This document shows positions 1 through 22,624 of a DNA stretch of 64,000 bases, piece after piece. The position numbers and the translations under genes are program-made. Under the pieces are notes generated by a model. The model ran no database searches. It was not told where the DNA came from and worked only from the letters and a program-made list of their open reading frames with translations. Source of the DNA: Octopus sinensis (taxonomy: Eukaryota); contig NC_043024.1 in NCBI RefSeq assembly GCF_006345805.1, positions 1,240,001 through 1,304,000 of the forward strand, written 5' to 3'. Positions within the stretch are counted from its first letter, which is position 1, and each line of letters starts with the position of its first letter.

Positions 1-392
1 AGGGTAAAGACACCCTTCAGTCATGAGTGACCATGAGATTGCACCTAGAAAGTTACCCTCTAAGGCATGACTGGCTCCCCGTGCTGGTGGTACATAAAAA
101 GCACCATCTGAATGTGGTTGATGCCAGTGCCGCCTGACTGGCTCTCATTCCGGTGGCACATAAAAAGCACCATCTGAATGTGGTTGATGTCAGTGCCGCC
201 TGACTGGCTCTCATTCCGGTGGCACATAAAAAGCACCCACTACACTCTCAGAGTGGTTGGCATTAGGAAGGGCATCCAGCTGTTGAAACACTGCCAGATC
301 AGATTGGACCCTGGTGCAGCCTACTTGCTTGCCAGTCCCCCAGTCAAACCATCCAACCCATGCCAGCATGGAAAACGGACGTTAAAGGATGA
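1..392 (+). mobile_element. Family C retroposon with (GAT)n tail, containing a 66-67-bp internal tandem duplication (68-237)
   Basis: Contains GGTTGGCATTAGGAAGGGCATCCAGCTG and the end CATGGAAAACGGACGTTAAAGGATGATGAT, shared by about 20 copies in both orientations. Examples are 16665-16895, 27405-27672, 28985-29180, 30143-30310, 30325-30560, 34205-34410, 35028-35345, 38005-38200, 44720-45030, 52150-52315, 54215-54465 and 63700-63900. The short-repeat tail suggests RTE-type mobilisation (inference). Confidence 0.8.
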
Positions 393-892
393 TGATTATT
401 ATTATTATTCTAAGTTTGACTTTTGCTTTATGTCTGTACAAGTTCGCTCCAAGTCTCTCCCAGAGACCTCAAGAGACAACAGGTTGGAAGTTCTATTATT
501 ATTATTATTATTAATATTGTTATTGATAGAGATGTAGTGCTCTTAATACAAGATGACCTCTAGGGATAATCAAGAAACCCCACTGTCTGAGATTTCCCTG
601 TAACCCCAAGAGCGAGTGCCCTCTCCAATTCCTTCTCTTCAACTCCCATCCACTCTTGCCAGTTTCACAACTTTTACCCAATTCTTTTAAACCTTTTTAC
701 ACTCCAGATATTTCCTTTCCCTTCCATTGCACACCATCCATACTTACACTGTTTTTTAATTTATTTTATTCCATTATATGTAAACCTCCACAATCTGTCC
801 TTGCATTGTCCCCTTCGTCCTTTGCCCTGGTGGCAAATAAATGAAATCATTGTTGTTGCTGTTGTTGTTGTTAATGATACTGTATTACACAC

Positions 893-968
893 CTTTAATA
901 ACAAAATGTTTTCTCATCTTTTTCAGGTAAGCAATCAATATTTATTGGACTTTACTGATTTGGTAAGA
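893..968 (+). promoter_or_regulatory. Candidate recursive splice site (3'ss immediately followed by 5'ss) with a 36-nt cryptic exon
   Basis: Branch-like CTTTAAT (893-899), pyrimidine tract (907-923), CAG|GTAAGC (926/927) and a second donor TTG|GTAAGA at 963. Confidence 0.5.
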
Positions 969-1417
969 GTGATTTTTTAATTCTTTTTTTTGCTCCCTTT
1001 TGCTTTGGTCGGGGTCTGCCTTTTTGTATCGGTCAGTTTTGCAATCACTACGCTTTTATATCCTTGTAAGTGATGGTCACTACAGGATAGGTACAGGTGC
1101 CTCATGCTTCCCAACCATGTGGTCTTGGGTTCAGTCCCACTGCTTGGCACTTTGGACAAACGTCTTCTATTATAGCCCCAGATCCATCAAACCTTGTGAG
1201 TGGATTCAGTAGCTGGAAACTGAAAAGAAGCCTGTTGTGTATCTTTGTCTTAACATCGTGTGATTGTTGTGAGTGTTAGCAAACTAGATTTCATTCCTCC
1301 CTTTTCTTTCATTCACACTTGTGACTTCTCTTTTCTATTCTTCTCTCTCATCCATTCCTTGCATGTCTGCTACTTCAGCATCCACATCACTCGCTCAACT
1401 CTCTCTCTCTCTCTCTC

Positions 1418-1822
1418 TCTTTTACTCTTTTACTTGTTTCAGTCATTTGACTGTGGCCATGCTGGAGCACCGCCTTCAGTCGAGCAAATCGACCCCGGGA
1501 CTTATTCTTTGTAAGCCCAGTACTTATTCTATTGGTCTCTTTTGCCGAACTGCTAAGTGACAGGACCGCAAACACACCAGCATCGGTTGTCAAGCAATGC
1601 TAGGAGGACAAACACAGACACACAAACACACAGACATACATATATATATACATATATACGACAGGCTTCTTTCAGTTTCCATCTACCAAATCCACTCACA
1701 AGGCATTGGTTGGCCCGGGGCTATAGCAGAAGACACTTACCCAAGATGCTACGCAGTGGGACTGAACCCGGAACCATGTGATTGGTTAGCAAGCTACTTA
1801 CCACACAGCCACTCCTGCGCCT
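1418..1822 (-). mobile_element. Family A tRNA-derived SINE (~400 bp, internal TA/CA microsatellite, (AAGAGTA)n tail), full-length, antisense
   Basis: Near-exact reverse complement of 2307-2726. Other antisense copies lie at about 6175-6554, 7946-8345, 13322-13742, 19620-19986, 23641-24054, 24555-24885, 39955-40372, 42230-42574, 45603-45990 and 54675-54970. Confidence 0.9.
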
Positions 1823-2306
1823 CTGTTATTTATTTATTTGAATTAATCATCCGTTATCTCGTAGCTTTGAGATTTCAAAGATGTGATTGTGTATTTTAGC
1901 AAAGACATTGTTGGGTAGGTGCAAGAAGCAAGATCTGGTCTGTTTATCCCTTTAGAATCTGGATTATTCTGTCAAATGTAATCTTTATTTATCCACATCG
2001 TTTCTACTAAATCATCCATTATCTCATAGCTTAGAGATTTCAGTGATGTGGTTGTTTATATTTAGAATGACATTGTAGGGTAGGTGTGAGAGGATAGATA
2101 TGGTGTAACCAACCCTCAAAACTTCCTTTTGCTTATGTTCCAAACGCCAACGACAAAATTGTTTTCCTAAATTTTTCATTGTTTTTTGAATTACTTCAAA
2201 CACCAGGAATACAACCACAAAAAGATTTTTTAAAAATACATTTTTGTTGATAATATAGTATTTATTCATTAAATATAGCTCGTTAATACGTCATTTTTAC
2301 AATTTA

Positions 2307-2471
2307 GAGTGGCTGTGTGGTAAGTAGCTTGCTAACCAACCACATGGTTCCGGGTTCAGTCCCACTGCGTGGCACCTTGGGCAAGTGTCTTCTGCTATAG
2401 CCCCGGGCCGAACAATGCCTTGTGAGTGGATTTGGTAGGTGGAAACTGAAAGAAGCCTGTCGTGTATATGT

Positions 2472-2523
<52 letters not shown>

Positions 2524-2726
2524 CTGTGTTTGTCCCCCTAGCATTGCTTGACAACCGATGCTGGTGTGTTTACGTCCCTGTCACTTAGCGGTTCGGCAAA
2601 ACAGACCGATAGAATAAGTACTGGGCTTACAAAAGAATAAGTCCCGGGTTCGGTTTGCTCGACTAAAGGCGGTGCTCCAGCATGGCCGCAGTCAAATGAC
2701 TGAAACAAGTAAAAGAGTAAAGAGAG
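2307..2726 (+). mobile_element. Family A tRNA-derived SINE, full-length, sense
   Basis: A-box-like TGGCTGTGTGG (2310-2320) and B-box-like GGTTCAGTCCC (2353-2363), followed by CCTTGGGCAAGT, reminiscent of the CORE-SINE domain. The tail is AAGTAAAAGAGTAAAGAG. Other sense copies lie at about 4945-5285, 17070-17422, 35888-36276, 49128-49428, 49862-50170, 50430-50756, 51662-52003 and 52712-53094. The exact family name (e.g. Twhb or OR-type octopus SINE) was not verified. Confidence 0.9.
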
Positions 2727-4274
2727 TTATATTTTCCCATATATTAAATAAAATTTCCTTTAATGCTGCCTTATTTGGTCGCTTGGTCTTCAGATAGAAA
2801 CCTTCACGCCACCCCCACACTCCTCCCCCAATTCTGTTGTTTGATGGATTCAATATTCGCATATTTTACCTATAAAAAGCTCGTAATATTGAGCCGTATT
2901 TAAATGTCTTTGTTTGAATAATTCATGGAGATGGCCTGCGATCTGCCGTCTACGTGTGATGTGAATTTGGCAATTGTATTATCACAGGTTTACACAAAGG
3001 CTTCTGAAGGAATTCCTATCAATGGCAGCAACAAAAGGGCCTTTATTGATACTTTCTGCACTGTTTGGTATTGTGTTTATCTGGAGTAGACATGTCGGGG
3101 GAAAGATCAGAAAGGGAGTCTGCTACTTGGTGATTTCCGAAAGACATCTTGCACTGCCACATCTTGTAGTGAAGAGTTAAAACCACTGAGAAATTAGTAT
3201 TAAAACTTCACATGGCTGTGTGGTAAGAAGCTTGCTTCCCAACTACATGGTTCTGGGTTCAGTCCCACTGCTGTGCACCTTGGACAAGTGTTTTCTACTA
3301 TAGCCTCGTGCTGATAAAAACCTTGTGAGTAGATTTGGTAGACGGAAACTGAAAGAAGCCTGTCGTGTGTGTGTGTGTGTGTATGTGTGAGGAATGTGTG
3401 TGTGTTGGTTTGTTTACATCCCTGTAACTTGGCGCTTTGGCAAAAAAAGAGTGATAGAATAATAAATATCAGGCTTAGAAAATAAGTACTGGTGTCGACC
3501 ATTGGGAAATATTACCTTTCTTGGAAACAGGTGGGGGTTGGCAACAGGAAGGGCATTGAACCCCTCAGAAAATCTTTCTCAACAAACCCCGTCTAACCCA
3601 CACAAACATGGTAAAAGTGATGTTGAGGATGATGATGATACCAGTGAAATTTGAAATTTTAACTCATATTGAACCAGATACTGTACATTTTTATGGACTC
3701 TTGTAGAATTCCACCAGCCTGGTTACATGGAAGAGTGGTTGAGTAGCGCTAATATTAAATGGTAATAAAGGCAGGCTGTATGGTGGTGGCGGCGGCGGTG
3801 GTGGTGGTGGGAGAGTGGCTGAGTAGTGTTAACATGAAAAAGATGAAGGCAAAAGCAAGCTATATGAGGGAGTGGTTAGTCAACATCAGATGGTGATGAT
3901 GATGATGGCAAGCTACGTAGGAGAGCGATCAAGTTAGTGTTAACCTATTTAATGAAGGCAGCATCATTAAAAAGCTAACGAGGAATAATTATGTGGCAAG
4001 GAAAAGAAAAAAGAAAAGAAAAGAAAAGAAAAAAACAATATTAGCCAATGACTAATATTATTTTAATTATTTCAGCAAAATACAAGAGACTGGCTCTGGA
4101 GATATTTCGGTCTTCTGACCTCATTAAGGAAGCGTAGACTTCAGTGTACTTATAGCAGCAGCGATAGAAGAACCATTAAGCAGAAAGACATGTACAACAG
4201 CATTAAAACTGATAAATCACAATTTCAAGACAGACTTTGTCTGGCCATGTGATTTCCTGTGATGGCAACAAGAT

Positions 4275-4452
4275 AAATAATCTTCCGCCACTCCTTGATA
4301 GTGAGTGCCACTTATGGAAAGCAATCTTGTTAGTTTAAAAACTCTTCAATTGTTGCCAATAAGTGGCCGATGACTTGGTACAGAATCTGTCTTGGCTTCT
4401 GACATTTTGTTTTGTCCTAGGAAATTTGTTTAGTCTCCATGTCTTTTCCTTT
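4275..4452 (-). mobile_element. Decayed CR1/L2-clade LINE ORF2 3' fragment (second copy at 32458-32638)
   Basis: Minus-strand translation of the better-read copy gives KRHGD...RDF*TNKIAFHKWHSLSRS, resembling the CR1/L2 C-terminal TRGH...R.FF.NRV...WNSLP. It has stops and frameshifts. Confidence 0.5.
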
Positions 4453-5876
4453 GAAGCTGTGGTTCTCATCCAGGGTCCACGTGATCCTTGGGCAGGGTCC
4501 ATGAAAGATTTTGTTACTCTTTTACTTGTTTCAGTCATGTGACTGTGGCCATGCTGGAGCACTGCCTTTAGTCGAGAAAATCGACCCCACAAGTTATTCT
4601 TTGTAAGCCTAGTACTTATTCTATCGGTCATTTTTGCTGAACCGCTAAATTATGGGGGTGTAAACACGCCAGCATTGGTTGTCAAGCAATGCTAGGGGGA
4701 CAAACACAGACACACAAACATATACACACACATACATATATATACACATATATATACACACACATATATATATATATATATCAAAAACTAACTCCAATAT
4801 TAATCAAAGAACAACAAACTCTTTCTTTGACACTGAAAAATAACAGACCAATGAGGGAGCTCCTTTGTGGCCACTTTGATTGCTAGAAATAGTTGCTAAT
4901 TCTCCTTCAAACTATCTCCTACTGAATAGTGGATGTATAGTATGGAATTTGCTTCCTCACCTCATGGTTCTGGGTTCAGTCCCACTGCGTGGCACCTTGG
5001 GCCAGTATCTTCTGTAGCCTCAGGCCAACCAAAGCCTTGTGAGTGGATTTGGTTGACGGAAACAGAAAGAAGCCTGTTGTATATACACACGTGTGTGTTT
5101 GTCCCCACCACCGCTTGACAACTGGTGTTGGTGTGTTTATGTCCTTGTAACTTAGCAGTTCAGCAAAAGAGACTGATAAGTAGCTGGCTTAAAAAAAAGA
5201 TTTCTTTTAATAAATAAATAGAGGTTGATTCATTCAACTAGCATTCTTGAAGGTGGTGCCCCAGCATGGCCACAGTCTGATGGCGAATAGATTGGGTAAT
5301 GTAGCCTCTGATATACGGGAGGGTGGTCATTGTTGGAACACCTTTGGCTATAGTCAGGGAAATCAACAAATGGAGGGATAAAGGTGCCATTAAGTTATTG
5401 AGTACATAAACACACCAACAGCAGTTGGCAAGTGAATGGGGGGGGACACACGGACACACACATATATATACATTGGGCTGGAACACCTCTGACTCTACAT
5501 CTATTTAACCAGGGAATTCAAGTAACATGCTTCAAGGCAGTGCCCCAGCATGGCCGCTGTCTGATGTCTGAAACAAATAAAAACAGAAGGAACACATTGG
5601 GTAATGTAGTCTCTGATATACAGCGGGGGTGGGGGTCATTGCTGGAAAGCTTGATAATACATCTATTTAATCAGGGAATTCCACTAATGGGGTGAGAAAG
5701 GTGCCTTTATAATTGGGAGAGAAAAAAAACCCCTTTTAATTCCCCCCCACCTTATGTAAACAGGAGGTGAGAGATAAGTGAAACAAAGAACATTGCATAA
5801 ATGGAGTCTGAATGCCCCCCCCCCCTGTGAAAAAGAGGAAAAGACAGGTTTAGTTATGATTGGAATGCTGTTAATA

Positions 5877-6064
5877 TATGAGGGGGTGGGGCTGGAAAAT
5901 TCCTGGCTTTAAGCAAAAGAAAATACAGGAGGGTCAGTTATGATTTTATTCAATATATTCCCCTCTCAGATTCTCACACTTATTGCAGTGGTCCTTCGGT
6001 TTTTGTAAGCCCTGTAAAAGAACTCAGAAGGTTGGGCTTCCAACCAGGCCTTCCGTGATACCCT
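5877..6064 (-). mobile_element. Mariner-derived MITE fragment
   Basis: Begins with TIR-like TATGAGGGGG...GAAAATTCCTGGCTTTA. The minus strand encodes LQGLQKPKDHCNKCENLRGEYIE*, typical of mariner transposase C-termini (W.KC....G.YVE). Confidence 0.75.
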
Positions 6065-8383
6065 TATTGGAACTTTTGCACCACATAAAGGCTCTCTCAT
6101 TTGGCCCCTCTTTTAATCTTACGCCCTACCAAACTGACTGATTAGCAGAAGACCGATTGCGAATTCAAAAGCCTTTACTCTTTTACTTGTTTCTGTCATT
6201 TGACTGTGGCCATGCTGGAGCACTGCCTTTAGTCGAGCAAATCAACCCCAGGACTTATTCTTTGTAAGCCTAGTACTTATTCTATCGGTCTCTTTTGCTG
6301 AACCGCTAAGTTACGGGGACGTAAACACACCAGCACGGTTGTCAAGCGATGTTGGGGGGGACAAACACAGACACACACACATATATATATTTATATACAT
6401 ATATACAACAGGCTTCTTTCAGTTTCCGTCTACCAAATCCACTCACAAGGTTTTGGTCGGCCCGAGGTTACAGTAGAAGACACTTGCCCAAGGTGCCACG
6501 CAGTGGGACTGAAACCGGAACCATGTGGTTCGGAAGCAAGCTACTTACCACACAGCTTTTTTTTTTTTTTTGTTAATGCCACCCTTATCTATGTAATGTT
6601 CGACCTAACATCCTAAAACGGGTGGATATCAGGTGAAATAAAAGGTCTTCTAAGTCTCTTTCCATTTGACCAAATCTTTGAGATATTGATTGTGACTGGC
6701 CATTTTTTGAACAGTAAAAGCTTTTGGGATCCATATTTCTTGCCTTTATCTCTTTGCCTCTCTATATCTCTTTTCCTTTCACCGCCTATCTATCTATCTC
6801 TCTCTCTCTCACTCTCTTTTATTGTCTATTTATCTCAGTCTCTTTCTCACTGCCTATCTATCCTTCTGTCTATCTATTTCTCTCTCTCTCTCACTATCTA
6901 TCTCTGTCTCTCTCTTTATATCTCTCTTGCTGTCTATTTCTCTATATCATCTCTCTTTCAATGTCAACCTCTGTCTATATATCTCTGTCATGCTCTCTCT
7001 CTCTCTCATCATATTCTTTATTGTAATTTGCAGTGTCATTGCTTCATGTGACCTTAGTAGATAATAAATCATTTCTGTTACCAACCAGCCACCACCACCA
7101 CCCGCCACAACCACCACCATCCTATCCAACCTGCTTTCATCTTCCCTTCTTGTCCTTCATATGTCTTCACTCTACCCCCACCCCACACACACCCATCCCT
7201 GCCTTTATTCCTAAGTCTTTCTGGGCAGTTGAGCTATGTCAGGAATGTCACTGCTAACACCACCACCACCTCTTCCACACACACACCTCCCATTCTCTTT
7301 ACTACTGCTACTGCCACCACCACCAACCACTACTACTACTGTTGCTATTAATACTGCCATCTGATGAATATAAAGGCACCTTTGTCACCCCTACCCCTTC
7401 TACTGCTATATGTGAAGCACATATATTATATATATACATTATATATATATATATAATTCACACATACACATGTATGTACCCCTTTAGTGATTTGTTGTTT
7501 AAATGTTATGTATTCTAGTTGCAGTGTGTTTATATATAGATACTCAGTGGTAAGGATTCGAAAGAGTATGTGTCGGGTGGGGGGTTGCTAACCACAACAG
7601 TTTTGGGTGAATGCAAAAGTACCAGGCTTTGAAAAAAAAGGGCAAGTTCTGGAGTCAATTTGTTTGAAAGGGTCGGTAAATAGTTGCTTCCTCTTCCATA
7701 GTCACCTTTGCTTTTTATCCCTTCGAAGGATGTTCCCCAGTTGATGTGTTTTAACATCTTTGAAGTACGGGGATCATACCCAGAAAGGTTTCTGTTTACT
7801 AACTGTTGGAAGTTTCAAAAATTTATAGAAATGTCTTGAAGGTGTTGGTGTTTTCTAGGGGAGGGTCATTATAGGACTGGGTCCAATTCTGTTGCTTTTA
7901 TTATTAAATCAGTTCATTAATTATTCAACTAACTAATCAAATGCTTACTCTTTTACTTGTTTCAGTCATTTGACTGTGGCCATGCTGGAGCACCGCCTTT
8001 AATCGAGCAACTCGACCCTGGGACTTATTCTTTTGTAAGCCCAGTGCTTATTCTATCGGTCTCTTTTGCCGAACTGCTAAGTAACGGGGACGTAAACACA
8101 CCAGCATCGGTTGTCAAGCAATGCTAGGAGGACAAACACAGACACACAAACACACACACGCATATATATATATATATATATATACACGACGGGCTTCTTT
8201 TCAGTTTCCATCTACCAAATCCACTCATATGGCTTTGGTCGGCCCGAGGCTATAGCAGAAGACACTTGCCCAAGGTGCCACGCAGTGGGACTGAACCCGG
8301 AACCATGTGGTTGGGAAGCAAGCTACTTACCACACAGCCACTCCATGTTTAACTTTGTTAAACAGTTAGTCTGGAAGTGGTTG

Positions 8384-8415
<32 letters not shown>

Positions 8416-9997
8416 AGAAGTGGCTGCTGTCGGTGGTGTAGTGGTAGTGGTGGCTGTGGTGGTGCTGCTGATGGTAGTGATGGTTGTGGTAAGAGCAGTG
8501 GCAGTGCTGGTGCAGCAGCAACAGTGTGTGTGTCTGTGTGTCCTAGGGTGGGAACAATAAACGTTGCTAAATTCATTAACGAGAACTTCTCAGACTTTTG
8601 TCTTCGGAATGGAAAGGTGATGATGATGATGATGATGATGATGGTGATGCTGTGTTGCTGCAGCTTGAGAAAGGAAAACAGCTGTTACAAGTCTGCCTCT
8701 CTCTCTGTATATGTCTTTGTCTGTCTGTCTGTCTCTGTATGTTTGTGTCTGTTTGTCAGTCTGCCTCTGTGTTTGTATGTCTATGTGTGTTTGTGTGTCT
8801 GTCTGCCTCTGTGTGTGTGTGTATTTATGTGTTTGTGTGTCTATCTGCCTCTGTGTATGTGTGTTAGTGTGCCTGTCTGGCTCTGTGTGTGTGTGTCTGT
8901 GTGCCTCGGTGTATGTGTGTCTATCTGCCTATGTGTTTGTGTGTCTGTCTGCTTCTGTGTGTGTGTGTGTGTTTATTTGTGTGCCTGTCTGCCTCTGTTT
9001 GTACAGTTGCCACAATGTCATTTCACTGATGAACCAGCCACCCTGCCACCTGCCACCCTGCCACCCTGCCACCCTGCCGTGCAGTTTAGTAAACAAAAAC
9101 ATTTCTGGGTATGATCCACATACTTCAAAGATGTTAAAACATATCAACTGGGGACATCCTTCGAAGGGATAAAAAGCAAAGGTGACTATGGAAGAGGAAG
9201 CAACTATATACCACCCCCCTTTCAGCAAAGGGTGCATGGAAGGGTGGCACCCTCCCCTCCCACCTTTCTCTACTGGAATGTATGAACAGGGATATCTCTG
9301 GGGTCCTTCCTCCATACTTTCTACTGGTGCTTATTTATTGGACAGGAGCTGACATGGGTGCCCCTACAGGAGGTTGCTCTGCAACCTAGAGAAAACTGCC
9401 AAATCTTCCTCAAATCACCCTTCTTTTGATTGTGGCCATGCTGTAGCACCACCTTGAATCGTTTTAGTCAAACAAATTGACTCCAGAACTTGCTTTTTTT
9501 TTTCAAAGCCTGGTACTTATACTGTCGGTTTCTTTTTGCCGAACCACTAAATCACAGGAACATAAACAAACCAACACCGATTGTCAAGTAGCGGCAGGAG
9601 GACAGAGACCCAAAGACATACACACATAGACTTGCTATGGCTGGACATCTTTGCTGTTGCCAACCCTCACCTTGGCCCAAGATGTCATGCAGTGGGACTG
9701 AACCCAAGACCATGCAGTTGGGAAGGAAGCAAGCTTCTTATCATTAGCCTTTCGCTTGTTTCAGTCATTAGATTGCGGCCATGCTAGGGGTTAAGACTGA
9801 ATTTGCTGAACTGGACTTCCTCTGGCTGGACGCCCTTGCTGTTGCCAACCCTCACCTGTTTCTGTGTAAGGGAATCTGGATCAGACATGTCTTCAGGGAA
9901 GATTGGAAACGATGGACACCACTTGGTTGACATGGCACTCATTTACAACTCTCATGGGATTTCAAGGCAAGGAGACATTAACACACACAAACACACA

Positions 9998-10055
<58 letters not shown>

Positions 10056-11229
10056 TGGTGATGATGATGATGAGGTGGGTGGCAGGGAGGTATCACACGA
10101 ATGCTACTGGTGGGAATTCTACACCAAATATGTAACCAGAACACCCACCATATACCCTGAATGAATATCCTTGTTTGAAGCCTTTAGCTATTGGTCAGAG
10201 GAGTGTCTTCTTATCAAAATAATTTGATTGGAGAAAAGGCTGTTGATAGTAGATACATGCATACGACTTGTGCAGACATATTTTTAGATGTATATTGTAT
10301 GCGAGGGGGGCACATAAACAAATAAAATACAATGAAAAATGGGCGTGCAGCCATAAGACTGACAAATATGGGGTAACGCAAAGGAAAATGAAAATGTCTT
10401 GTTGGACTAGAAACAAGAAAGGGACAGATAAAATTTGTGTGTTTGTGTCTTTATATTTGATATGATGATGATTTCACTTGGGTATTGCTGTGCTAATAAT
10501 CTTGTGTTAGAACTCAGTATACAAATATTTTACAACAAAATGTCAAACTATGAGTGTATCGCACCCTATAACAGAAACGGCTGTAAAGTAAATGAAGTTC
10601 ATAACACAATTGTTTATTTCCTTTGTCATCCCAGTTTCTTGTGTGTGGTGTGTGTGTTCTCTCACATGATATGTGTGTGTGTGTGTGCTCTCACATGCAT
10701 GATTATGGATTCATTTACACATACATACACAGGTATATCTGTAAAGCGAAACAAGAGTATATACGTACACAGGTGCATACATGTAATAGGAAATACCTGA
10801 AGGAAACAAACCAAACATCGACTGCTTGTCAAAAACTGAACTCATTGCATGTAGGAAGTGTTTCAGAAACCAGAAAATATGTGTGGAGGGCAGCTGGGAG
10901 GAATGGGGTGGGGTGAAGGGTTGATAAATGGGGAGGAAATGATAACATACTGATACACTGAGCAAAGGACACACATAGCTTCATGTGACCAGATTGAAAG
11001 AGCAGATGACTGATCATGTGATCAACAGATAAGTAAAAGATGTTATTTCCCACATCTGTTACATCTGATGGAATGATTTTTGGTTTATCCACCCACCACA
11101 ACAAAATGGAAATCTTAATAAGGTGCCACGTAAAAAGCACTGGTGATGGTACCATGTAAAAGGCACTGGTTTGGGGTCCTATGCAAACAAAACAGTAAAT
11201 TAAGGATTCACAGTAGTTCGTTAGGGGAA

Positions 11230-11393
11230 TCAATTATGATTTTATTCAACATATTCCCCTCTCAGATTCACATACTGACTGTAGTGGTCCTTGTAGTTTT
11301 TCTAAGTTCTGTAAAAGAACTTGGAAGGCTGGGCCTCCAAACAGGCCCTTCGTGAAACCCTTAAAGCCAGGAATTTTTCAGTATCCCCTCATA
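11230..11393 (-). mobile_element. Mariner-derived MITE fragment, same family
   Basis: Homologous to 5877-6064 and 63149-63278, and ends in the reverse complement of the TIR (AAAGCCAGGAATTTTTCAGTATCCCCTCATA). Confidence 0.7.
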
Positions 11394-12076
11394 TATAAAC
11401 GTCTGGGAGTTCTTTGAACTTCTGTTCCCTAAATCAGCTCACACAGCTTTGGTTGGCCCAGGGCTAGAGTAGAAAGCAGTAGCCTGAGTTCCATGCAGTG
11501 AGATTGAACCCAAAGCCACATGGCTGGGAAACGGACTTCCTACCCACACAGCTGTACTCACTCCTGGATAGCAAAATTCGTTGCAGACCTATTTTATTGA
11601 ATTCCTTCTCCGCTCTCCTGTTCTGTTTTTGTACTCTCCACTCAATTAGTCATATGGTAAATACAGCTAAGACAACAGCCATGTCTGTCCGTCCGTCCGT
11701 CAGCCTGGCCTTGTTTGTTTGTGTGTTGTTACCTTAGAGAAGCTTCCAACATGTGTTACTTTGATAATGTGACGAAATGAACGTGGGCTGGTCTCGGAAG
11801 ATGTCAGGTAACCAACCTGGCTGCACAACAACTATCTGTACAAACAACAAACAGGATTTATCGATTGAATTGGTGTGCTGAAGACATCGCCGACTGGGGC
11901 CCACCTACTTGTGGCTGCGGTGGGAAAAGCTCCGTCTCTCTCTCTCTCTCTCTCTCTCTCTGGTGTCCTGAGTTGTGTAACGTAGAAACATGGAGACGAG
12001 AGGGGGAGATGGGGGGGGGAGAAAGAGAGTTGCGGCAACAGCAGCATTTTCTGATAAAATCAGTGAGGCATGTTGA

Positions 12077-12183
12077 GACATATATATATACACACATACA
12101 AACATACATACATATATATAATATATATATATATAATATATATATTATATACACATATATATTATATATATATATATACACAC

Positions 12184-12232
<49 letters not shown>

Positions 12233-12484
12233 TATACATATATATAATATATATATATATATACACAAACTATATATATATATACACATATATATATATA
12301 CACACACACATATATATATTAATACACATATATATATATATATACACACACACACATATATATATATATATGTATATAATACACACATATATATATATAT
12401 ATATACATACACACACAACACACACACATAATATATATATGTATATACATACAAACACACATATATATATACACATACACACAC

Positions 12485-12519
<35 letters not shown>

Positions 12520-12646
12520 CATATACATACACACACACACACACACACACAACCACTATATATATATATAGATATATATACATACATATACATACACACA
12601 CACACACACACACATATATTTATATATAAACACCACACACACACAC

Positions 12647-12677
<31 letters not shown>

Positions 12678-12790
12678 TAATATATATATACATACTATAC
12701 ATACACACACACACACACACACATAATCTATATATATATATACATACATACATACATATACATATAGACACACACACATGCATGCGTATG
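12077..12790. repeat. ~700-bp compound (TA)n/(CA)n microsatellite
   Basis: Directly visible, and explains the Y/I/H/T/C/V-rich ORFs. Similar arrays lie at 17440-17820, 18500-18975, 43510-44225 and 48780-48920. Confidence 0.95.
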
Positions 12791-13534
12791 TTTCCTTTAA
12801 CTTTTCTTTTGCTCTTTTACTTGTTTCAGTCATTAGACTGTGGCCATTCTGGGGCAATGCCTCGAATTTTGGTCAGACTTCCTTTTATTTTGAGTCTGCT
12901 TCTTATTCTGTCAGTGTCTTTTTGCCAAACTGCTCAGTTACAGACCCCCATGCTGGAGCACTGCCTTGTAGAATTTTAGTAAAAAAAAAAGCTGACCCAG
13001 GACTTATTTTTTAGCATGGTACTTATTCTATCGGTCTCTTTTGGCAAACTGTTAAGTTACACGGACATAAACAAACCATCACTGGTTGTCAAGCAGTGGT
13101 GAAAGACAGGCCAACTAATGCCTTATGAGTGAATTTGGTTAAAGGAAACTGGATGGAAGCCCATTGTGTGTGTATGTATATATGTTGGCCGTGTATTTTT
13201 GTAATTCCCCCCCACCACCACCACTTTGATTACTAATATAAAACTAACACACCTGTTTGTTGCTCCTACACCTGTCTTTGACTTTTGTTTTTCTATAAAT
13301 CTGAACTATGTATCTCTTTACTCTCTCTTTTACTCTTTTACTTGTTTCAGTCATTTGACTTTGGCCATACTGGAGCACCGCTTTTAATCGAGCAACTCGA
13401 CCCCGGGACTTATTCTTTTGTAAGCCCAGTACTTATTCTATCGGTCACTTTTGCCGAACCGCTAAGTAACGGGGACATAAACACACCAGCATCGGTTGTC
13501 AAGCAATGCTAGGGGGACAAACACAGACACACAA

Positions 13535-13568
<34 letters not shown>

Positions 13569-13781
13569 TATATATACATATATACAACAGGCTTCTTTCA
13601 GTTTCCATCTACCAAATCCACTCACAAGGCTCTGGTCGGCCCGAGGCTATAGTAGAAGACACTTGCCCAAGGTGCCACGCAGTGGGACTGATCCCAGAAC
13701 CGTGTGGTTGGTAAACAAGATACTTACCACGCAGCCACTCCTGTATATATATGGTGTGTGTGTGTGTATATATATATATAT

Positions 13782-13817
<36 letters not shown>

Positions 13818-15024
13818 ACTAATGTATAAAATACAAGACGTAAAGATATGTAAATAATAGAATATATATTTCCAACCAATGTATAGAATACAGGATGTAT
13901 AGATATTTAAAACACAATATATATATATATCCATTTAGTGTAAAAAATAATACAGGATGTATAAATATGTGAAATACAGAATATATATATTTCCAACCAA
14001 TGGACAAACACAGAAAATCCTCATTGTCATATTATGTCTGTTTTCCATGCTGGCATGGGTTGGACAGTTTGAGAAGAGCTGGTGAGGCAGAACTCTGTGC
14101 CAAAGTCCCCTTGTCTGCTTTGGAATGGTTTCTATTTCCGAATTCCCTTTGTAATGCCAACCACTTTTACAGAGTGTACTGGGTGCTTTTTTATTTTATT
14201 TTTTTTATTTATTTATTTATTTTGAGGGCACCAACACTAGTGGGGTCACCACGTAACTTGCATGACAAACTCCTCCAAAATATATAGATACATAGACATA
14301 TGAATATATAAAATACGGAAACTAAGTATCCAACAAGTGTACAAAATACAGGACATACAAATATACCAAATACAGGAAATTTATAGCCTCCTGATGCATA
14401 ACAATGAAAGAATACCATCGGATTAATTGAAGCAGATTTTATTCCATAGAAAATACCAAATGACCATCACCATCCTCCTCATCATTGTCATCATTGTCGT
14501 AATCAGAAAGGCATTTTCTGTCAGTTATATTCCATGTTGGTATGGATTGGACTAAATCTCTCGCAGCTGTATTCTGTGGCTGGATGCCCTTCCTGATGCC
14601 AACCCTTGCTCGGTTTTCAACTAAGGGCTGCTTGACCCTGCGTCCTTTACTTGCTGAATAACTGTCAGATGTTTTGTTTATCAGAAACATAAACAATGTC
14701 ATCATTGAGGCTATATCAGCTGAAAACTCACACACACTCACACACATGCACGCTGTCCAAGAATTTGGACCTGGAGATCTCCATTTCCAGCGACTTCGAG
14801 GGCCACTTCGCAGTGGTGCCGGGCGTCAACGAAGAGCCCTCCACTACAACAAGATGACCAAGATTTTTTTTTTTCCAAGGTCTGGGGTCTTCCGCCCCTA
14901 AGCCCTAGACCTTCACCTAATCACTCTTACCCGTCTTGTGGCTTAACAACAACAACAACTACACATGCACTGCAGACACACACACACACACACACACACA
15001 CTGTGTTTCTGTACAGCATCCATC

Positions 15025-15275
15025 TAATGCAGAATCCCATGTAAGATTTTGCTGCTAAAATTGATGTGCAATAAACTGGTTACATTTCTGCAACACACAA
15101 AATATTTATTAAACCATTTTTTTTTTTAATATACAATTCCTAGATTTTTAATCCTAAACATACAATGGGAGTTTTTAGACATTGAATGGTTCTGTTCCTC
15201 CCACCCCAAACCCCATCTAAATCAAATAGGGATGAAAGGGGTTCATAGATTTTAAAAAATGGTTCAGAACCACTG
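15025..15275. mobile_element. hAT-type MITE (partial)
   Basis: Ends GGTTCAGAACCACTG, the reverse complement of a CAGTGGTTCT.AACC TIR. Related pieces lie at 4455-4510, 32638, 45320-45360 and 55402-55480. Confidence 0.55.
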
Positions 15276-15471
15276 CTTTAACAAGCTCACTTACAAGGCA
15301 TTGGTCAGTACAAAGCTCAACAAGATAAACATTGGCCCAAGGCAGCTTGCTGTGGATTGAACCCAAAACTGCATGGCTGGAAGCAAGCTTCTTAACTACT
15401 TGGCCATGTCAAACCATCCAACCCATACCATCTTGGAAAATGGACATTAAATTATTATTATTATTATTATT

Positions 15472-16020
15472 GAGTGAGAGAGCAGTGCATGCCATCAAAG
15501 TGACACTGGGGTACAAATATACGAAGCCCAGTATACCCATCATGACTACCTGTCTGATAAGGGTACACCAGGCACAGGCACATGCATCACAACCCTATGT
15601 GTGCGATATGGTGATCTCATATCAAGTTTAACAGCGCATGACCTTGCAGGTGGGGCCCAGTTAGAATTTTCTTCTGGTCGAGTAACCCATCCTGCTCAAA
15701 AGGTCCCTGAATAAGGGTTGTTTAAGGATGTTGAATAAACCACCATGTTTCCAAAGGTGAATTATCCAAACCTCTAAGAATTCCTCTCAACACGTGGCTA
15801 TGATGCTCCCCCACTACTTCTGCTCGTGATCAGAGATGCACATATTGTCAGCCACTAAGGGACATGGTCAACTGTTTAAGGTCAAACAACTGACAAGCAA
15901 ATCTGTGGTATTGAGCAGAATATTTGCTGTAAGTTCATCTGTTATACCAACACAAAACAATGTAGATGATAACACTTCCAATCAGTTAAGATCAGAAGCC
16001 ATGAGAGCCACTGCCTGGTA
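15472..16020 (-). mobile_element. ~550-bp non-autonomous element embedded between two (ATT)n tracts
   Basis: High-complexity, ORF-poor block bounded by (TTA)n at 15447-15471 and 16020-16054. This is consistent with an (AAT)n-tailed or microsatellite-targeted retroelement. It is single-copy in the window, so the repeat status is inferred. Confidence 0.45.
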
Positions 16021-16024
16021 CTAC

Positions 16025-16055
<31 letters not shown>

Positions 16056-18515
16056 GTGGTGGTGCCATGGAAACCAGATAACCATTCCTGTGGGTTCTAG
16101 AACGTGAAGTAAGTGTTGTTGGTGGTGGCCATGGAGGGGGAGGAGAAACAATAACTGGCTACATTGCTGAAGTGAAGGATGACGATGATGAAAGTCTTGT
16201 GATCGGAGTTTACTTTTTGTTATGAATAATTAAATAATTCTTCCCTTTGTATTGCAATCAATATCACGTTTTCACTCACAAACAATAACCAACTCCTCAG
16301 TACATTAGTTCTGATCAAGGACTCTAAAAAATCATTTTGCTGGTTAACGAACTAATCAACTAGCTTGAGTGATCGTTTGCTTATTCTTTAGTCAGTCAGT
16401 TTGCGTCCCTTGTTTGTGTTAAACCCATTCTGTCCTGACCCCTTAGCATTCAGACCACTCTGTCAAATGTGACGCTTACTCGCATTATTTTGAATTAATC
16501 ATGCATTTTCTCCAAGCTTTGAGATGTCGATGATTATAATTGCTTATTTCTAGAATGTCATTGTAGGCTTGGTACAAGAGGCCAGATCCGGCCAGCTTGT
16601 GAAATGCAAAGCTTATTTATTGACTTCATTTTGAATTAATCATGCATTATCAATGATCAACATCATCATCATCATCGTTTAACGTCCGTTTTCTGTGCTA
16701 GTCTGATCTGGTAAGGTTTCTACAGCTGGATGCCCTTCCTAACGCCAACCACTCCAAGAGTGCAGTGAGTGCTTTTTACATGCCACTGGCACAGAGGCCA
16801 ATCAAGCGGAACTGGCATCAACCATGCTCAAATGGTGCTTTTTACATGCTAACAGCACAGGAGCCAGTCATGCTCGAATGGTGCCTTTTATGTGCCACAC
16901 ACGCACACAGAAAATTAATATAATTGTCACGAAACATGACTCGGGTGTTAGAAACACCTACATTGCTAGAAATAAGAGCTAAAGTGCTCTGATGCTGTAG
17001 TCAAAGCACATAATTGTATACATATGTATAGTTATCTGCGAAACACTTGGCCCTTGAGTCAATCTGTGACATGGTTCTGGGTTCAGTCCCACTGCATGGC
17101 ACCTTGGGCAAGTATCTTCTACTATAGCCTCGGACCGACCAAAGCCTTGCGAGTGGATTTGGTAGACGGAAACTGAAAGAAGCCTGTCGTATATGTGTGT
17201 GTGTATATATATATGTTTGTGTGTGTGTGGTCTGTTTGTCCCCCAACATCGCCTGACAACCGATGCTGGTGTGTTTGCGTCCTCGTAACTTAGCAGTTCG
17301 GCAAAAGAGACCGATAGACTAAGTACTAGGCTTACAAAGAATAAGTCCTGGGGTCGATTTGCTCGACTAAAGGTGGTACTCTAGCATGGCCACAGTCAAA
17401 TGACTGAAACAAAAGAGTAGAGAGTAATATATATACATGCATGCCTATATCTCTCTATCTATCTATCTGCCTGTCTATGTATGTATATACATACATATAT
17501 ATATATATTATATATATATATATATATAATATATATATATATTATATATATATTATATACAAAATGAGAAAATGGAGAAACATACCTAAATCAATCATCA
17601 ACCATCAGATAATACCCAATCAATACTTTATTAAACCATTACACAACAGCAATGATATTATAGATATATGTATACAAAATTTAGAGGACTAACCACTAAA
17701 AAAAATGGACAGCATATATGCTAGATATAGACGTCAAAATCGCCATTTTCCACAAATGTATATATATATACATATATATGTATGTATGTATGTATATATG
17801 TATGTATGTATATATGAAAGGGAAAGTGAGAGAGAGAGACTGATAAGATAGCATGGTGGTTGAACTTCGATGAAACGAGGAACAATATATGTATTTTTTA
17901 ATAATAGGAAATCACCAGAGAGGGATAGAAAGAGAGAGAGAGATAGTGGTGTGTGTTCGTTATGTCTTTGTTAGTATTATTAGTGTCGTAAGCATGTACC
18001 AACATGAACCATGATTGAATTCAGGAGAACTGCCACCCAGCGAGCCGAGGCAAGTACAGCTGATCTCTTATGGTTAAAGGGTGGTCTACCCGGGGCTTTT
18101 TAGTCACACTCACTCACTGTGTTACGGTTCTGTCTGTTTGTTCTACTTTTCAACTGCTATGTCTGTCTATGCCCAAGTAGCCGGCTTCTCTCTCCTTCAC
18201 ACACACATGCGTATGTACATACATACATGTAATGCAGTGTTTCTTTCTCCTACATGATGTACAGAAATGTCTCACTTTCAACCTCCTTCCACTTTAAACA
18301 GCCATTCACAACTATTTTTCATTCACAACTCGGCAGAACAAACTCTGTGTGTGTGTGTGTGTGTGTGTGCATATAGAAACGAATTGTTGGCTAAGTGTAA
18401 CGTGCAGATACGCAGAAGTTATAATAACAATATTACAGATTTATTATTAAACCTGTTGTACATTAGCGTTTTGTGTGGGGTGTGTACATTCGCTTAGTTT
18501 TTGTGTATAGTTATA

Positions 18516-18557
<42 letters not shown>

Positions 18558-18844
18558 CTATATATATATAATGTTAAAAGCAGTCCAACTTTAATTGAAG
18601 AAAAAAGTCAATGCATTTATGGAGAGTATCACAATTATTTTAGTGTGGAAAAGGTTGACAGTGACCGAGAAGTTTTGGCCTCAGTTTCTCTTCAGACTGT
18701 CTGAGAAAGTAAACTAAAACTTCAAAGACTCTGGACGCTTTCTTCTAAAATAATATATACATACACACATACATACATACATATGTGTGTTATATATATA
18801 ATATTAATATATATATATATATATTATATAAGATATATATATAT

Positions 18845-18882
<38 letters not shown>

Positions 18883-19581
18883 GTGTGTGTATATATATAT
18901 ATCTCTTATATCTTATATATATATATAAACAACATACATACATACACACATACATACGTACACACACACATATATGCACATGCGATAATGATGATGAAGA
19001 CGTACACCTACACCTCTATGCACAGACAAGGCTGTGTGGTTAAGAAGCTCACTTCGCAACCGCATGATTTCCGGTTCAGTCCCCCTCCGTGGCACCTCAG
19101 CGAAGCGTCTTCTTTAAAACAGCTCAGGTTGAATTGATCAACTTACCCCCTTTCAAAGCAGTGCCCCCAGCCATGCTCACAGCTAATTATTAAAATAATT
19201 AAAGTGGCAAACCCGCAGGATCATTAACATGTTGGACAAATGTTTTGTCTTTCTTCCTTTTGGCGGGGGCGGGTGATAAAATACATTATGTAATAGTCTA
19301 GCACTGGGGTCAGTGTAATCCTTTAATCCCCTAACCATAAAAACATTGCTGGCGTTGTGCCAAAATTTCTTGCATAATTGTTACCCCACTGGACAAAATA
19401 CTTTGTGACACTTCATCTGGTTCTTTACATTCTGAGTTCAAATACTGCCGAGGTGGACTTTGCCTTTTATCCTTTCGGGGTCAGTAAAATAAATATCAGT
19501 TGAGGACTGGGGTCGATTTAGTAACCAGCCCCCCCTCTCCACATATTTCAGACCCTGTGTCTATTTTTGAAAGAGTTATTA

Positions 19582-19615
<34 letters not shown>

Positions 19616-20541: not shown

Positions 20542-20927
20542 ACTCTTTTACTTGTTTCAGTCATTTGACTGCGGCCATGCTGGAGCACCGCCTTTAATCG
20601 AGCAACTCGACCCCGGGACTTATTCTTTTGTAAGCCCAGTACTTATTCTATCGGTCTCTTTTGCTGAACCGCTAAGTAACGGGGACATAAACACACCAGC
20701 ATCGGTTGTCAAGCAATGCTAGGGGGGACAAACACAGACACACAAACACACACACACATATATATATACGACAGGCTTCTTTCAGTTTCCGTCTACCAAA
20801 TCCACTCACAAGGCTTTGGTCGGCCCGGGGCTATAGCAGAAGACACTTGATCAAGGTGCTATGCAGTGGGACTGAACCCGGAACCATGTGGTTGGTTAGC
20901 AAGCTACTTACCACACAGCCACTCCTG
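20542..20927 (-). mobile_element. Family A SINE flanked by a ~95-bp direct repeat
   Basis: Intact antisense copy. Flanks 20447-20541 and 20926-21016 are near-identical. Confidence 0.9.

Positions 20928-21826: not shown

Positions 21827-21868
<42 letters not shown>

Positions 21869-21869
<1 letters not shown>

Positions 21870-22572: not shown

Positions 22573-22624
<52 letters not shown>

What the first reader, a model, noticed from the sequence alone, without database searches (positions are those of the whole stretch)
893..968. Full recursive-splicing (ratchet point) architecture in the long upstream intron of shep
Seen: the + strand has a branch consensus CTTTAAT with its A 28 nt before the AG, a pyrimidine tract and CAG directly followed by GTAAG. 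A second strong donor (GTAAGA at 963) defines a 36-nt cryptic exon, 927-962. That exon is open in phase 0 (VSNQYLLDFTDL), the phase of the next exon at 28735. Known: juxtaposed AG|GT sites with a short downstream cryptic exon are the recursive-splicing signature in long introns of Drosophila (Ubx, kuz, osp, fz) and of vertebrate neuronal genes. Inference: this octopus shep intron may be removed stepwise, with a switchable 12-aa insert. I am not aware of recursive splicing being shown in cephalopods. CAGGTAAG alone is expected about once per 64 kb, so the case rests on the combination of signals.
Basis: partly seen in the sequence, partly recalled or inferred. Interest (0 to 1): 0.75.

Follow-up and report, generated by a model that had tools for sequence, protein, structure and literature searches.

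The report
Conserved recursive-type microexon in octopus shep
The flagged site is the edge of a real, already annotated 12-amino-acid alternative exon of the octopus RBMS/shep gene. Its first bases rebuild a splice donor, and this layout is conserved in the distant octopod Argonauta and matches the recursive-splicing exons of fly Ubx. Stepwise splicing itself remains unproven.

Summary
CAGGTAAG alone occurs at chance level (3 seen, 2.4 expected). In a position-weight scan, however, 927 is the only AG|GT on either strand with both a strong acceptor and a strong donor (about 0.003-0.01 expected per 64-kb strand).

The 36-nt "cryptic exon" is not cryptic. It is an annotated in-frame cassette exon (VSNQYLLDFTDL) in O. 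sinensis X7 and two O. vulgaris isoforms, and VSNQFLLDITDL in O. bimaculoides X3. Each has a sister isoform lacking exactly 12 aa.

In Argonauta hians the same 54-kb intron holds a homologous island. TCATCTTTTTCAG|GTAAG and TG|GTAAGAGTGA are identical, while the exon body has diverged (48 nt, still open in frame). The rebuilt donor AAG|GTAAGC scores above the exon's own donor.

This is the "expressed RS-exon" layout of Ubx m1/m2. Fly shep also has an expressed 36-nt RS-exon, probably in another intron. No RNA intermediates could be examined, so recursion remains inferred (about 0.55). I found no paper linking recursive splicing to cephalopods.

Verdict: new member of a known kind, moderate interest.

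The parts
893..899 (+). Putative branch-point motif CTTTAAT (branch A at 898, 28 nt upstream of the AG)
   Evidence: The sequence is. The TTAAT core aligns with TTAAT in Argonauta (alignment A1). No AG occurs between it and 925; the previous AG ends at 707. Branch usage itself is inferred, not shown.
903..926 (+). Polypyrimidine tract plus CAG acceptor of the 36-nt exon
   Evidence: Acceptor PWM score is 8.98, within the range of the gene's real acceptors. Positions -20..-1 are 18/20 identical to Argonauta. Annotated isoforms that contain the exon use this acceptor.
927..962 (+). 36-nt in-frame alternative coding exon (VSNQYLLDFTDL), the RS-exon
   Evidence: The peptide is identical in O. sinensis XP_029652482.1 and O. 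vulgaris CAI9741891/2, and reads VSNQFLLDITDL in O. bimaculoides XP_052833215.1. Sister isoforms are exactly 12 aa shorter. The Argonauta homologue is 48 nt and open in frame 0 only.
927..932 (+). GTAAGC at the exon's first bases: it rebuilds a 5' splice site (AAG|GTAAGC) once joined to the upstream exon
   Evidence: GTAAG is identical in Argonauta. The upstream exon ends in AAG in Argonauta genomic DNA and in a squid transcript. The rebuilt donor scores 6.8 bits against 2.8 for the exon's own donor. Use as a donor is inferred.
963..972 (+). The exon's own 5' splice site GTAAGAGTGA
   Evidence: The last 3 exon bases plus 10 intron bases are 12/13 identical to Argonauta. Annotated inclusion isoforms use this donor.
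963..28734 (+). Downstream segment (27,772 nt) of the long intron, which would be removed in the second step
   Evidence: The Argonauta counterpart is 13,353 nt and its upstream segment is 40,830 nt.
1..926 (+). 3' end of the upstream intron segment; the preceding exon (...SPRGK) lies beyond the window
   Evidence: The upstream exon is not found in the window. The O. vulgaris CDS range of 136.6 kb implies that roughly 40-60 kb lie upstream (inference).
18011..18049 (+). Alternative first coding exon MIEFRRTATQRAE (internal promoter, GC donor) inside the downstream segment
   Evidence: tblastn match to the N-terminus of O. bimaculoides A0A0L8HI80. A conserved island at 18303-18369 matches Argonauta 56510-56574.
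28735..28895 (+). Next constitutive exon ([12 protein letters not shown]...LLAMCE, start of RRM1), phase 0
   Evidence: conserved in Argonauta.

Best explanation
Positions 927-962 are a real, alternatively included 12-codon exon of the octopus RBMS/shep orthologue. It sits in the middle of a very long intron: 54 kb in Argonauta and an inferred 70-90 kb in Octopus.

The exon begins with GTAAG. Splicing the upstream exon (...AAG) onto it therefore rebuilds a consensus 5' splice site exactly at the junction. The spliceosome then has two choices. It can use this rebuilt donor, which removes the 36 nt together with the remaining 27.8 kb and gives the isoform without the insert by two-step (recursive) splicing. 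Or it can use the exon's own weaker donor at 963, which keeps the 12-aa insert. This is the expressed RS-exon mechanism first described for Ubx m1/m2.

Shown here: the signals exist, both splice sites are used in annotated mRNAs, both isoforms exist, and the signals are conserved across octopods while the peptide is not.

Inferred: the skipped isoform arises by re-splicing at 927 rather than by direct skipping, and the branch point.
For: - Unique strength of the juxtaposed site in 128 kb of strand sequence.
- Annotated plus/minus 12-aa isoform pairs exist in O. sinensis (X7/X8), O. bimaculoides (X3/X4) and O. vulgaris.
- The Argonauta hians 54-kb intron contains only two collinear islands alignable to the window's intron, and one of them is this exon.
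- Within that island the acceptor is 18/20 identical, GTAAG is 5/5 identical (first six exon bases 5/6) and the downstream donor is 12/13 identical. The flanks are about 35-50% identical, and the exon body differs in length (36 vs 48 nt) and in peptide.
- The Argonauta site is by far the top AG|GT in its intron: sum 14.3 against 6.2 for the next.
- The rebuilt donor outscores the exon's own donor in both species: 6.8 vs 2.8 and 6.2 vs 3.9. This is the relation reported for recursively spliced sites (PMC8605326).
- The peptide evolves fast: 2/12 changes between Octopus species whose whole proteins are 98% identical.
- The acceptor is as strong as those of constitutive exons and is transcribed 27.8 kb before the final acceptor, which favours first-come splicing (inference).
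Against: - No RNA-level evidence could be examined: no intermediates, no lariats beginning at 927, no saw-tooth coverage.
- In mammals most annotated exons that rebuild a donor are not re-spliced, because the exon junction complex blocks the site (PMC6224609). Whether that applies in molluscs is unknown.
- The site was ascertained because of its AG|GTAAG motif, so the motif itself is not independent evidence.
- GTAAG conservation rests on only two lineages at the DNA level.
- The exon is frame-preserving and open in both species, as expected of an ordinary coding cassette exon.
- Inclusion isoforms are annotated only after the ...SPRGK exon, which rebuilds the stronger donor. A simple donor-competition switch would predict the opposite.
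- Decapodiform transcripts carry a different 33-nt exon at this junction that starts with ATC.
Confidence: 0.55

Rival explanations
1. It is an ordinary alternative cassette exon. The isoform without the insert arises by direct skipping from the upstream exon to 28735, and GTAAG at the exon start merely encodes Val-Ser (Val-Arg in Argonauta) and is never used as a donor.
For: - The exon is annotated, in frame, and open in frame 0 only in both Octopus and Argonauta.
- Conserved splice sites and flanks are normal for alternative exons.
- In mammals most annotated exons that rebuild a donor stay included because the exon junction complex represses re-splicing (PMC6224609).
- Squid and cuttlefish use a non-GT microexon at the same junction.
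Against: - The peptide is poorly conserved (36 vs 48 nt, few shared residues) while GTAAG is identical.
- The rebuilt donor is stronger than the exon's own donor in both species.
- A strong acceptor placed about 28 kb (Octopus) or 13 kb (Argonauta) ahead of the final acceptor in a 54-90 kb intron would have to be bypassed routinely.
- All seven expressed RS-exons tested in fly reporters behaved recursively (PMC8605326).
Confidence: 0.38
2. It is a Drosophila-style '0-nt' intronic ratchet point with a truly cryptic exon that never reaches mRNA.
For: - Juxtaposed acceptor and donor in a long intron, a downstream donor within 36 nt, and a poorly conserved exon body.
- These features match the description of intronic ratchet points in PMC8605326.
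Against: - The exon appears in annotated protein isoforms of three Octopus species.
- It is frame-preserving, whereas cryptic RS-exons are generally out of frame.
Confidence: 0.04
3. It is a chance coincidence of splice-like motifs in AT- and pyrimidine-rich intronic DNA, or a fragment of a transposable element, with no function.
For: CAGGTAAG alone occurs at chance frequency. The site is flanked by SINE copies and a (TTG)n tract.
Against: - Expected frequency of a site this strong is 0.0025-0.01 per strand.
- The segment is single-copy in the window.
- The site is conserved and collinear in Argonauta.
- It is used in annotated mRNAs.
Confidence: 0.01
4. It is a neuron-specific microexon of the SRRM4/eMIC-regulated programme, with inclusion controlled by an upstream UGC enhancer rather than by donor competition.
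For: It is a short in-frame exon in a neuronal RNA-binding protein gene, lying in a disordered N-terminal region.
Against: - At 36 nt (48 nt in Argonauta) it is longer than the usual limit of 27 nt (my knowledge of the microexon literature).
- There is no TGC in the 40 nt upstream of the acceptor in either species (sequences printed).
Confidence: 0.05

Closest known systems
Ubx microexons m1 and m2 of Drosophila (Hatton et al. 1998; described in PMC8605326)
   Same: Both are short, frame-preserving coding exons inside a very long intron (about 73 kb in Ubx; 54 kb in Argonauta and an inferred 70-90 kb in Octopus). Each exon starts with a donor motif, so joining it to the upstream exon regenerates a 5' splice site. 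Mature mRNAs exist with and without the exon.
   Different: Ubx m1/m2 are 51 nt and ultraconserved across all positions, including wobble sites. The octopod exon body is poorly conserved and changes length (36 vs 48 nt). Re-splicing is experimentally shown for Ubx and not for the octopus exon. The genes and phyla are unrelated.
Drosophila shep expressed RS-exon (chr3L:5193431-5193466, minus strand, CDS; Table S1 of PMC8605326) and the shep cryptic RS-exon reporter in the same paper
   Same: It lies in the orthologous gene family and is an expressed RS-exon in the coding sequence, also 36 nt. The ratchet donor is stronger than the exon donor (0.98 vs 0.93), and the exon is mostly skipped (PSI 0.02-0.07 in S2 cells).
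   Different: Insect shep proteins carry their optional insert of about 11 aa (VGISLLRRLPS, VGIWFTRRQHT) between RRM1 and RRM2. The fly RS-exon is therefore probably in a different intron from the octopus one, which lies N-terminal to RRM1. I did not verify this on the fly genome. The octopus exon at the RRM-linker position (57914-58051) starts with GTCATA, a poor donor.
Vertebrate RS-exons (Sibley et al. 2015) and annotated RS-exons repressed by the exon junction complex (Blazquez et al. 2018, PMC6224609)
   Same: Exon definition uses a downstream donor, a donor is rebuilt at the exon-exon junction, and the outcome is set by competition between the two donors. Such exons sit in long neuronal genes, and many are annotated exons.
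   Different: In vertebrates most annotated RS-exons are constitutively included because the exon junction complex blocks the rebuilt donor. Whether that repression operates in molluscs is unknown. The few efficient vertebrate intronic sites have non-coding or disruptive exons.
Drosophila intronic ratchet points (Burnette 2005; Duff 2015; Joseph 2018)
   Same: A (Y)nCAG|GTAAG motif in a long intron, with the acceptor|donor motif far more conserved than the short exon that follows it and a downstream donor within 100 nt.
   Different: Those exons are cryptic, generally out of frame, and absent from mRNA. This one is annotated and in frame.

Membership tests
Expressed RS-exon (Ubx m1/m2 type; annotated RS-exon sensu Blazquez 2018) | An exon present in mature mRNA of at least some isoforms | tested here: met
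   VSNQYLLDFTDL is present in O. sinensis XP_029652482.1 and O. vulgaris CAI9741891/2. VSNQFLLDITDL is present in O. bimaculoides XP_052833215.1. This rests on database annotation; I did not see the underlying reads.
Expressed RS-exon (Ubx m1/m2 type; annotated RS-exon sensu Blazquez 2018) | The exon's first bases plus the end of the upstream exon rebuild a 5' splice site comparable to real donors | tested here: met
   AAG|GTAAGC scores 6.8 bits, equal to or close to the gene's real donors (6.8, 7.8, 7.5). The upstream exon ends in AAG in Argonauta DNA and in a squid transcript. For the window's own species the Lys codon is inferred. The distal ...SQYS exon ends in TCG, keeping G at -1.
Expressed RS-exon (Ubx m1/m2 type; annotated RS-exon sensu Blazquez 2018) | Both inclusion and skipping isoforms exist | tested here: met
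   Isoform pairs differing by exactly 12 aa: 485/473, 562/550, 537/525 and 531/519 aa.
Expressed RS-exon (Ubx m1/m2 type; annotated RS-exon sensu Blazquez 2018) | The skipped isoform is produced by re-splicing at the rebuilt donor (intermediate, lariat, or donor-mutation evidence) | not testable with these tools
The cluster listings of octopod RBMS proteins contained no octopus transcript contigs.
Intronic ratchet point with cryptic RS-exon (Drosophila type) | Juxtaposed strong acceptor and donor, (Y)nNCAG|GTRAGT | tested here: met
   ttttctcatctttttcag|GTAAGC is the only such site on either strand of the window. The homologous site is the top site in the Argonauta intron.
Intronic ratchet point with cryptic RS-exon (Drosophila type) | Located in a long intron, typically tens of kb | tested here: met
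   The Argonauta intron is 54,231 nt, split 40,830 + 13,353. The Octopus downstream segment is 27,772 nt, and the upstream segment is an inferred 40-60 kb.
Intronic ratchet point with cryptic RS-exon (Drosophila type) | A downstream donor within about 100 nt that defines the RS-exon, weaker than the ratchet donor | tested here: met
   GTAAGA lies at 963, 36 nt downstream. Scores are 2.8 vs 6.8 bits in Octopus and 3.9 vs 6.2 in Argonauta. The PWM is approximate and typed from general knowledge.
Intronic ratchet point with cryptic RS-exon (Drosophila type) | Acceptor|donor motif highly conserved while the exon body is poorly conserved | tested here: met
   Identities are 18/20, 5/6 and 12/13 at the signals. 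The body has indels and a different peptide. Only two lineages were compared at the DNA level.
Intronic ratchet point with cryptic RS-exon (Drosophila type) | The exon is cryptic (absent from mRNA) and generally out of frame | tested here: not met
   The exon is annotated in three species and is frame-preserving in both Octopus (36 nt) and Argonauta (48 nt). It is therefore not filed in this sub-class.
Intronic ratchet point with cryptic RS-exon (Drosophila type) | Saw-tooth intron coverage and junction reads into the ratchet point in total or nascent RNA | not testable with these tools
   No read-level data were available.
eMIC/SRRM4-dependent neural microexon | Length of 27 nt or less and a UGC motif just upstream of the acceptor | tested here: not met
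   The exon is 36 nt (48 nt in Argonauta). There is no TGC in positions -40..-1 in either species. The criteria come from my own knowledge of the microexon literature.

The most novel reading that the evidence does not exclude
Octopods remove the 54-90 kb intron in front of RRM1 of their shep/RBMS gene in two steps through a conserved stepping-stone exon. Its splice signals have been held fixed since the Octopus-Argonauta split, while its peptide drifts freely. The plus/minus 12-aa isoforms are then a by-product of competition between two donors. This would be the first documented recursive splicing in a cephalopod, and as far as I could find in any lophotrochozoan. It would have arisen independently of the RS-exon in fly shep, which probably lies in a different intron of the orthologous gene.
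Probability: 0.5. Interest if true: 0.6.

Novelty: new member of a known kind. Interest (0 to 1): 0.45.

Why it matters
Recursive splicing has been demonstrated in flies and vertebrates. Its reach across animals, and whether the exon junction complex represses it outside deuterostomes, are open questions (PMC6224609).

Cephalopods have very large genomes, long neuronal introns and heavy RNA-level regulation, yet no recursive site has been reported for them in the literature I could search. This locus offers a precise and cheap test case. It has one conserved site, known flanking exons and two annotated outcomes, and the prediction is clear: lariats starting at G927, and constitutive inclusion if GTAAGC is mutated.

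The locus also shows that a purely sequence-based call of acceptor, donor and second donor can pick out a functional exon. It illustrates a long-lived exon whose splice signals are more constrained than its coding content.

The exon itself and its 12-aa insert are already in public annotation, and putative RS-exons are common in other animals. A specialist would therefore find this plausible rather than startling.

Tried and rejected
1. A 178-aa query from the window's exons returned no cephalopod proteins, because the search appears to cap hit length at about 1.75 times the query. A chimeric 452-aa query fixed this.
2. DNA for the O. bimaculoides and O. vulgaris genes could not be fetched because the gene ranges are 145.9 and 136.6 kb. 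GTAAG conservation among Octopus species is therefore known only at the protein level (Val-Ser).
3. The cuttlefish locus L003 reaches only about 20 kb upstream of the NYP exon. It shows neither the octopod exon nor the decapodiform 33-nt exon, so it is uninformative.
4. The decapodiform exon IYDDVHFLRSK was not found in window 1-28734 or in Argonauta L001 1-64420, allowing up to 4 aa or 8 nt mismatches.
5. An exact scan of JGI metagenome contigs for the conserved composite motif gave 0 hits.
6. A tblastn with the low-complexity N-termini was swamped by His/Gln/Asn repeats and was redone with trimmed queries.
8. Joseph et al. 2018 (PMC6709686) is not held, so the position of the fly shep RS-exon was inferred from insect protein isoforms.
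9. I considered and rejected three readings. A 5'-UTR intron was ruled out because cephalopods have upstream coding exons, although mollusc orthologues starting at MPA suggested it. A TE-derived or chance motif was ruled out. A poison exon was ruled out because there is no stop codon and the exon is in frame.

Full report
**The observation**

- CTTTAAT at 893-899, with A898 28 nt before G926;
- a T/C-rich tract;
- CAG at 924-926 abutting GTAAG at 927-931;
- a second GTAAGA at 963-968;
- 36 intervening bases that read VSNQYLLDFTDL.

Only that frame is open. The octamer CAGGTAAG by itself is at chance: 3 matches on both strands against 2.41 expected, one of them the true donor of the exon ending at 62958.

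I scored every AGGT on both strands with simple acceptor and donor weight matrices. These are approximate and were typed from general knowledge. Position 927 is the only site where both halves are strong. Its acceptor scores 8.98 bits, within the 7.0-11.2 range of the four real acceptors in the window, and its donor core scores 3.63. The sum is 12.6, against 5.2 for the next site on + and 4.3 on -. In 400 third-order Markov simulations of 64 kb, a site at least this strong appeared 0.0025 times per strand. Naive coincidence of strong acceptors and donors gives 0.006-0.011. The stretch from about 530 to 1100 has no other copy in the window, apart from the (TTG)n tract at 838-878, and lies between SINE copies.

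**The gene**

The + strand carries the 5' half of an RBMS/alan shepard orthologue. Its exons in the window are:
- 28735-28895 ([12 protein letters not shown]...LLAMCE);
- 29857-29915;
- 36567-36658;
- a 46-codon cassette at 57914-58051;
- 62739-62958.

An alternative first exon, MIEFRRTATQRAE, lies at 18011-18049. Non-cephalopod mollusc orthologues begin at the Met inside the 28735 exon. That made me suspect a 5'-UTR intron, but cephalopod proteins extend further upstream.

**The key result**

O. bimaculoides isoform X3 reads ...SPRGK-VSNQFLLDITDL-NYPKTS.... O. sinensis X7 (XP_029652482.1) and two O. vulgaris proteins (CAI9741891/2) contain exactly the window's VSNQYLLDFTDL at that junction. 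In each species there is a sister isoform exactly 12 residues shorter (485/473, 562/550, 537/525, 531/519 aa). Argonauta hians X1 also lacks the insert.

The "cryptic exon" is thus an annotated in-frame cassette exon. The window matches O. sinensis/vulgaris rather than O. bimaculoides. The preceding exon (...SPRGK) and the more distal MDGY...SQYS exons lie outside the window. All annotated isoforms that start with MDGY skip the 36-nt exon.

**Conservation**

The Argonauta hians locus could be fetched (L001). There the ...SPRAK exon ends at 10189 and the NYPKSS exon starts at 64421, giving a 54,231-nt intron.

A sensitive blastn of the window against this locus finds only two collinear, single-copy islands inside that intron:
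- window 909-998 matching L001 51002-51102;
- window 18303-18369 matching L001 56510-56574, which lies beside the alternative first exon.

In the first island:
- the acceptor region is 18/20 identical;
- GTAAG at the exon start is 5/5 identical (first six exon bases 5/6);
- the last three exon bases plus ten intron bases (TG|GTAAGAGTGA) are 12/13 identical;
- sequence 21-40 nt upstream is 7/20 identical;
- sequence 11-40 nt past the donor is 15/30 identical.

The exon body has diverged. It is 48 nt in Argonauta (VRNLCFLFGHDDDYDV) against 36 nt in Octopus, and in both it is open only in frame 0. The Argonauta site is also by far the best AG|GT in its intron, with a sum of 14.3 against 6.2 for the next. 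Even between Octopus species the insert differs at 2 of 12 residues, while the whole proteins are 98% identical. The splice signals, including the donor-like start of the exon, are therefore under stronger constraint than the peptide.

**Donor competition**

The upstream exon ends in AAG in Argonauta genomic DNA (GCAAAG|GTAAAA) and in a squid transcript (GGAAAG). Joining it to the exon gives AAG|GTAAGC in Octopus (6.8 bits) and AAG|GTAAGA in Argonauta (6.2 bits). These are as good as the gene's real donors (6.8, 7.8, 7.5). The exon's own donors score lower, at 2.8 (TTG|GTAAGA) and 3.9 (GTG|GTAAGA). The distal ...SQYS exon ends in TCG, so it would also rebuild a donor with G at -1.

A ratchet donor stronger than the RS-exon donor is the relation described for recursively spliced sites (PMC8605326).

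**Intron size**

The downstream segment in the window is 27,772 nt. In Argonauta the two segments are 40,830 and 13,353 nt. The O. vulgaris coding range is 136.6 kb and the O. bimaculoides range is 145.9 kb. Subtracting what the window covers and a plausible 3' remainder leaves roughly 40-60 kb upstream of 927. This is an inference, and it puts the whole intron at about 70-90 kb.

**What it most likely is**

The anatomy is that of an expressed RS-exon, as first described for the Ubx microexons m1 and m2: short frame-preserving exons in a roughly 73-kb intron that regenerate a donor at their 5' edge. After the first splice, either the regenerated donor is used and the exon is lost, or the exon's own donor is used and the exon is kept (PMC8605326).

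It is not the "0-nt" cryptic ratchet-point class, whose exons are absent from mRNA and generally out of frame. That feature was tested and not met.

The conservation pattern, with ultraconserved acceptor|donor and a drifting body, resembles the cryptic class more than it resembles Ubx m1/m2, which are conserved at every position.

Whether the rebuilt donor is actually used cannot be decided here. In fly reporters all tested expressed RS-exons behaved recursively. In mammals, by contrast, the exon junction complex represses most such donors (PMC6224609). I put re-splicing at about 0.55, ordinary direct skipping at about 0.38, and the remaining rivals at a few per cent together.

**Link to fly shep**

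Joseph et al. 2021 list Drosophila shep among genes with a validated cryptic RS-exon reporter. Their Table S1 also lists an expressed RS-exon in the shep coding sequence: chr3L:5193431-5193466, 36 nt by the table's coordinate convention, ratchet donor 0.98 against exon donor 0.93, PSI 0.02-0.07 in S2 cells.

Insect shep proteins in my hits carry an optional VGISLLRRLPS or VGIWFTRRQHT between QAQMAK and QQEQDP, that is, between the two RRMs. The fly RS-exon is therefore probably in a different intron from the octopus one. I could not check this on the fly genome. If so, the two are parallel rather than orthologous.

**Wider distribution**

Decapodiform transcripts (a JGI metatranscriptome contig, L002, and Logan contigs clustered with Acanthosepion pharaonis proteins) carry a different 33-nt exon at the same junction. 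It reads SPRGK-IYDD(V/A)HFLRSK-NYPAR and starts with ATC, so it rebuilds no donor. I could not find it in the octopod sequences. The cuttlefish locus did not reach far enough upstream to be informative. Other molluscs show no insert at this junction. The RS-type exon is so far an octopod feature.

**Literature**

No paper in the searchable library contains both "recursive splicing" and "octopus". The single hit for "cephalopod" is a coincidence of two unrelated references.

**Verdict**

The exon and its 12-aa insert are already in public annotation. The new element is the recognition that it has a conserved recursive-splicing architecture. This is a new member of a known kind, and it becomes moderately interesting once tested with total RNA-seq or a donor-mutant minigene.

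Noticed in passing
window 57914-58051 (+); L001 75916-76116: A 46-codon cassette exon (VIRKREPRIREPF...MTSFGG) lies between RRM1 and RRM2 and is conserved in Argonauta. It sits at the same intron position as the short optional linker inserts of insects (VGIW...), Haliotis (IWHRLDS), Biomphalaria and Lingula. It starts with GTCATA, so it rebuilds only a weak donor.
   Followed up: partly
window 18011-18049 (+) and 18303-18369: An alternative first coding exon, MIEFRRTATQRAE, has a GC-type donor (GAG|GCAAGT). This implies an internal promoter inside the long intron. A 67-nt island about 250 nt downstream is 79% identical to Argonauta L001 56510-56574.
   Followed up: partly
L002 378-410 (JGI metatranscriptome contig); proteins P0140, P0288, P0289: Squid/cuttlefish-type transcripts carry a different 33-nt microexon (IYDDVHFLRSK, starting with ATC) at the same SPRGK|NYP junction. 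It was not detectable in the octopus window or the Argonauta intron.
   Followed up: partly
L004 68783-68791 (O. vulgaris OX597840.1): The O. vulgaris model CAI9741895.1 splits the distal MDGY...SQYS exons off as a separate 141-aa 'gene'. Its last residues, VS*, are read-through of the donor TCG|GTGAGTTGA, so this is an annotation artefact. The distal exon group spans 58.8 kb, and the MTSRP exon is not found within the 10 kb downstream of it held in L004.
   Followed up: yes
window 36659-36664 (+): The constitutive exon 36567-36658 uses a non-consensus donor, AAG|GTTCGT. Its score of about 1 bit compares with 7-8 for the other donors.
   Followed up: no
window 65-412, 1102-1250, 1412-1840, 2300-2470 and dozens more: The introns are densely populated by at least two SINE-like repeat families, with 20-30 copies each at 75-95% identity, and by many microsatellites such as (TTG)n, (CA)n and (TA)n. 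The RS-exon sits in one of the few single-copy gaps.
   Followed up: partly
tool behaviour: the search for homologous proteins returned no hit longer than about 1.75 times the query length. Short exon-derived queries therefore miss full-length orthologues, and padding the query restored them.
   Followed up: yes
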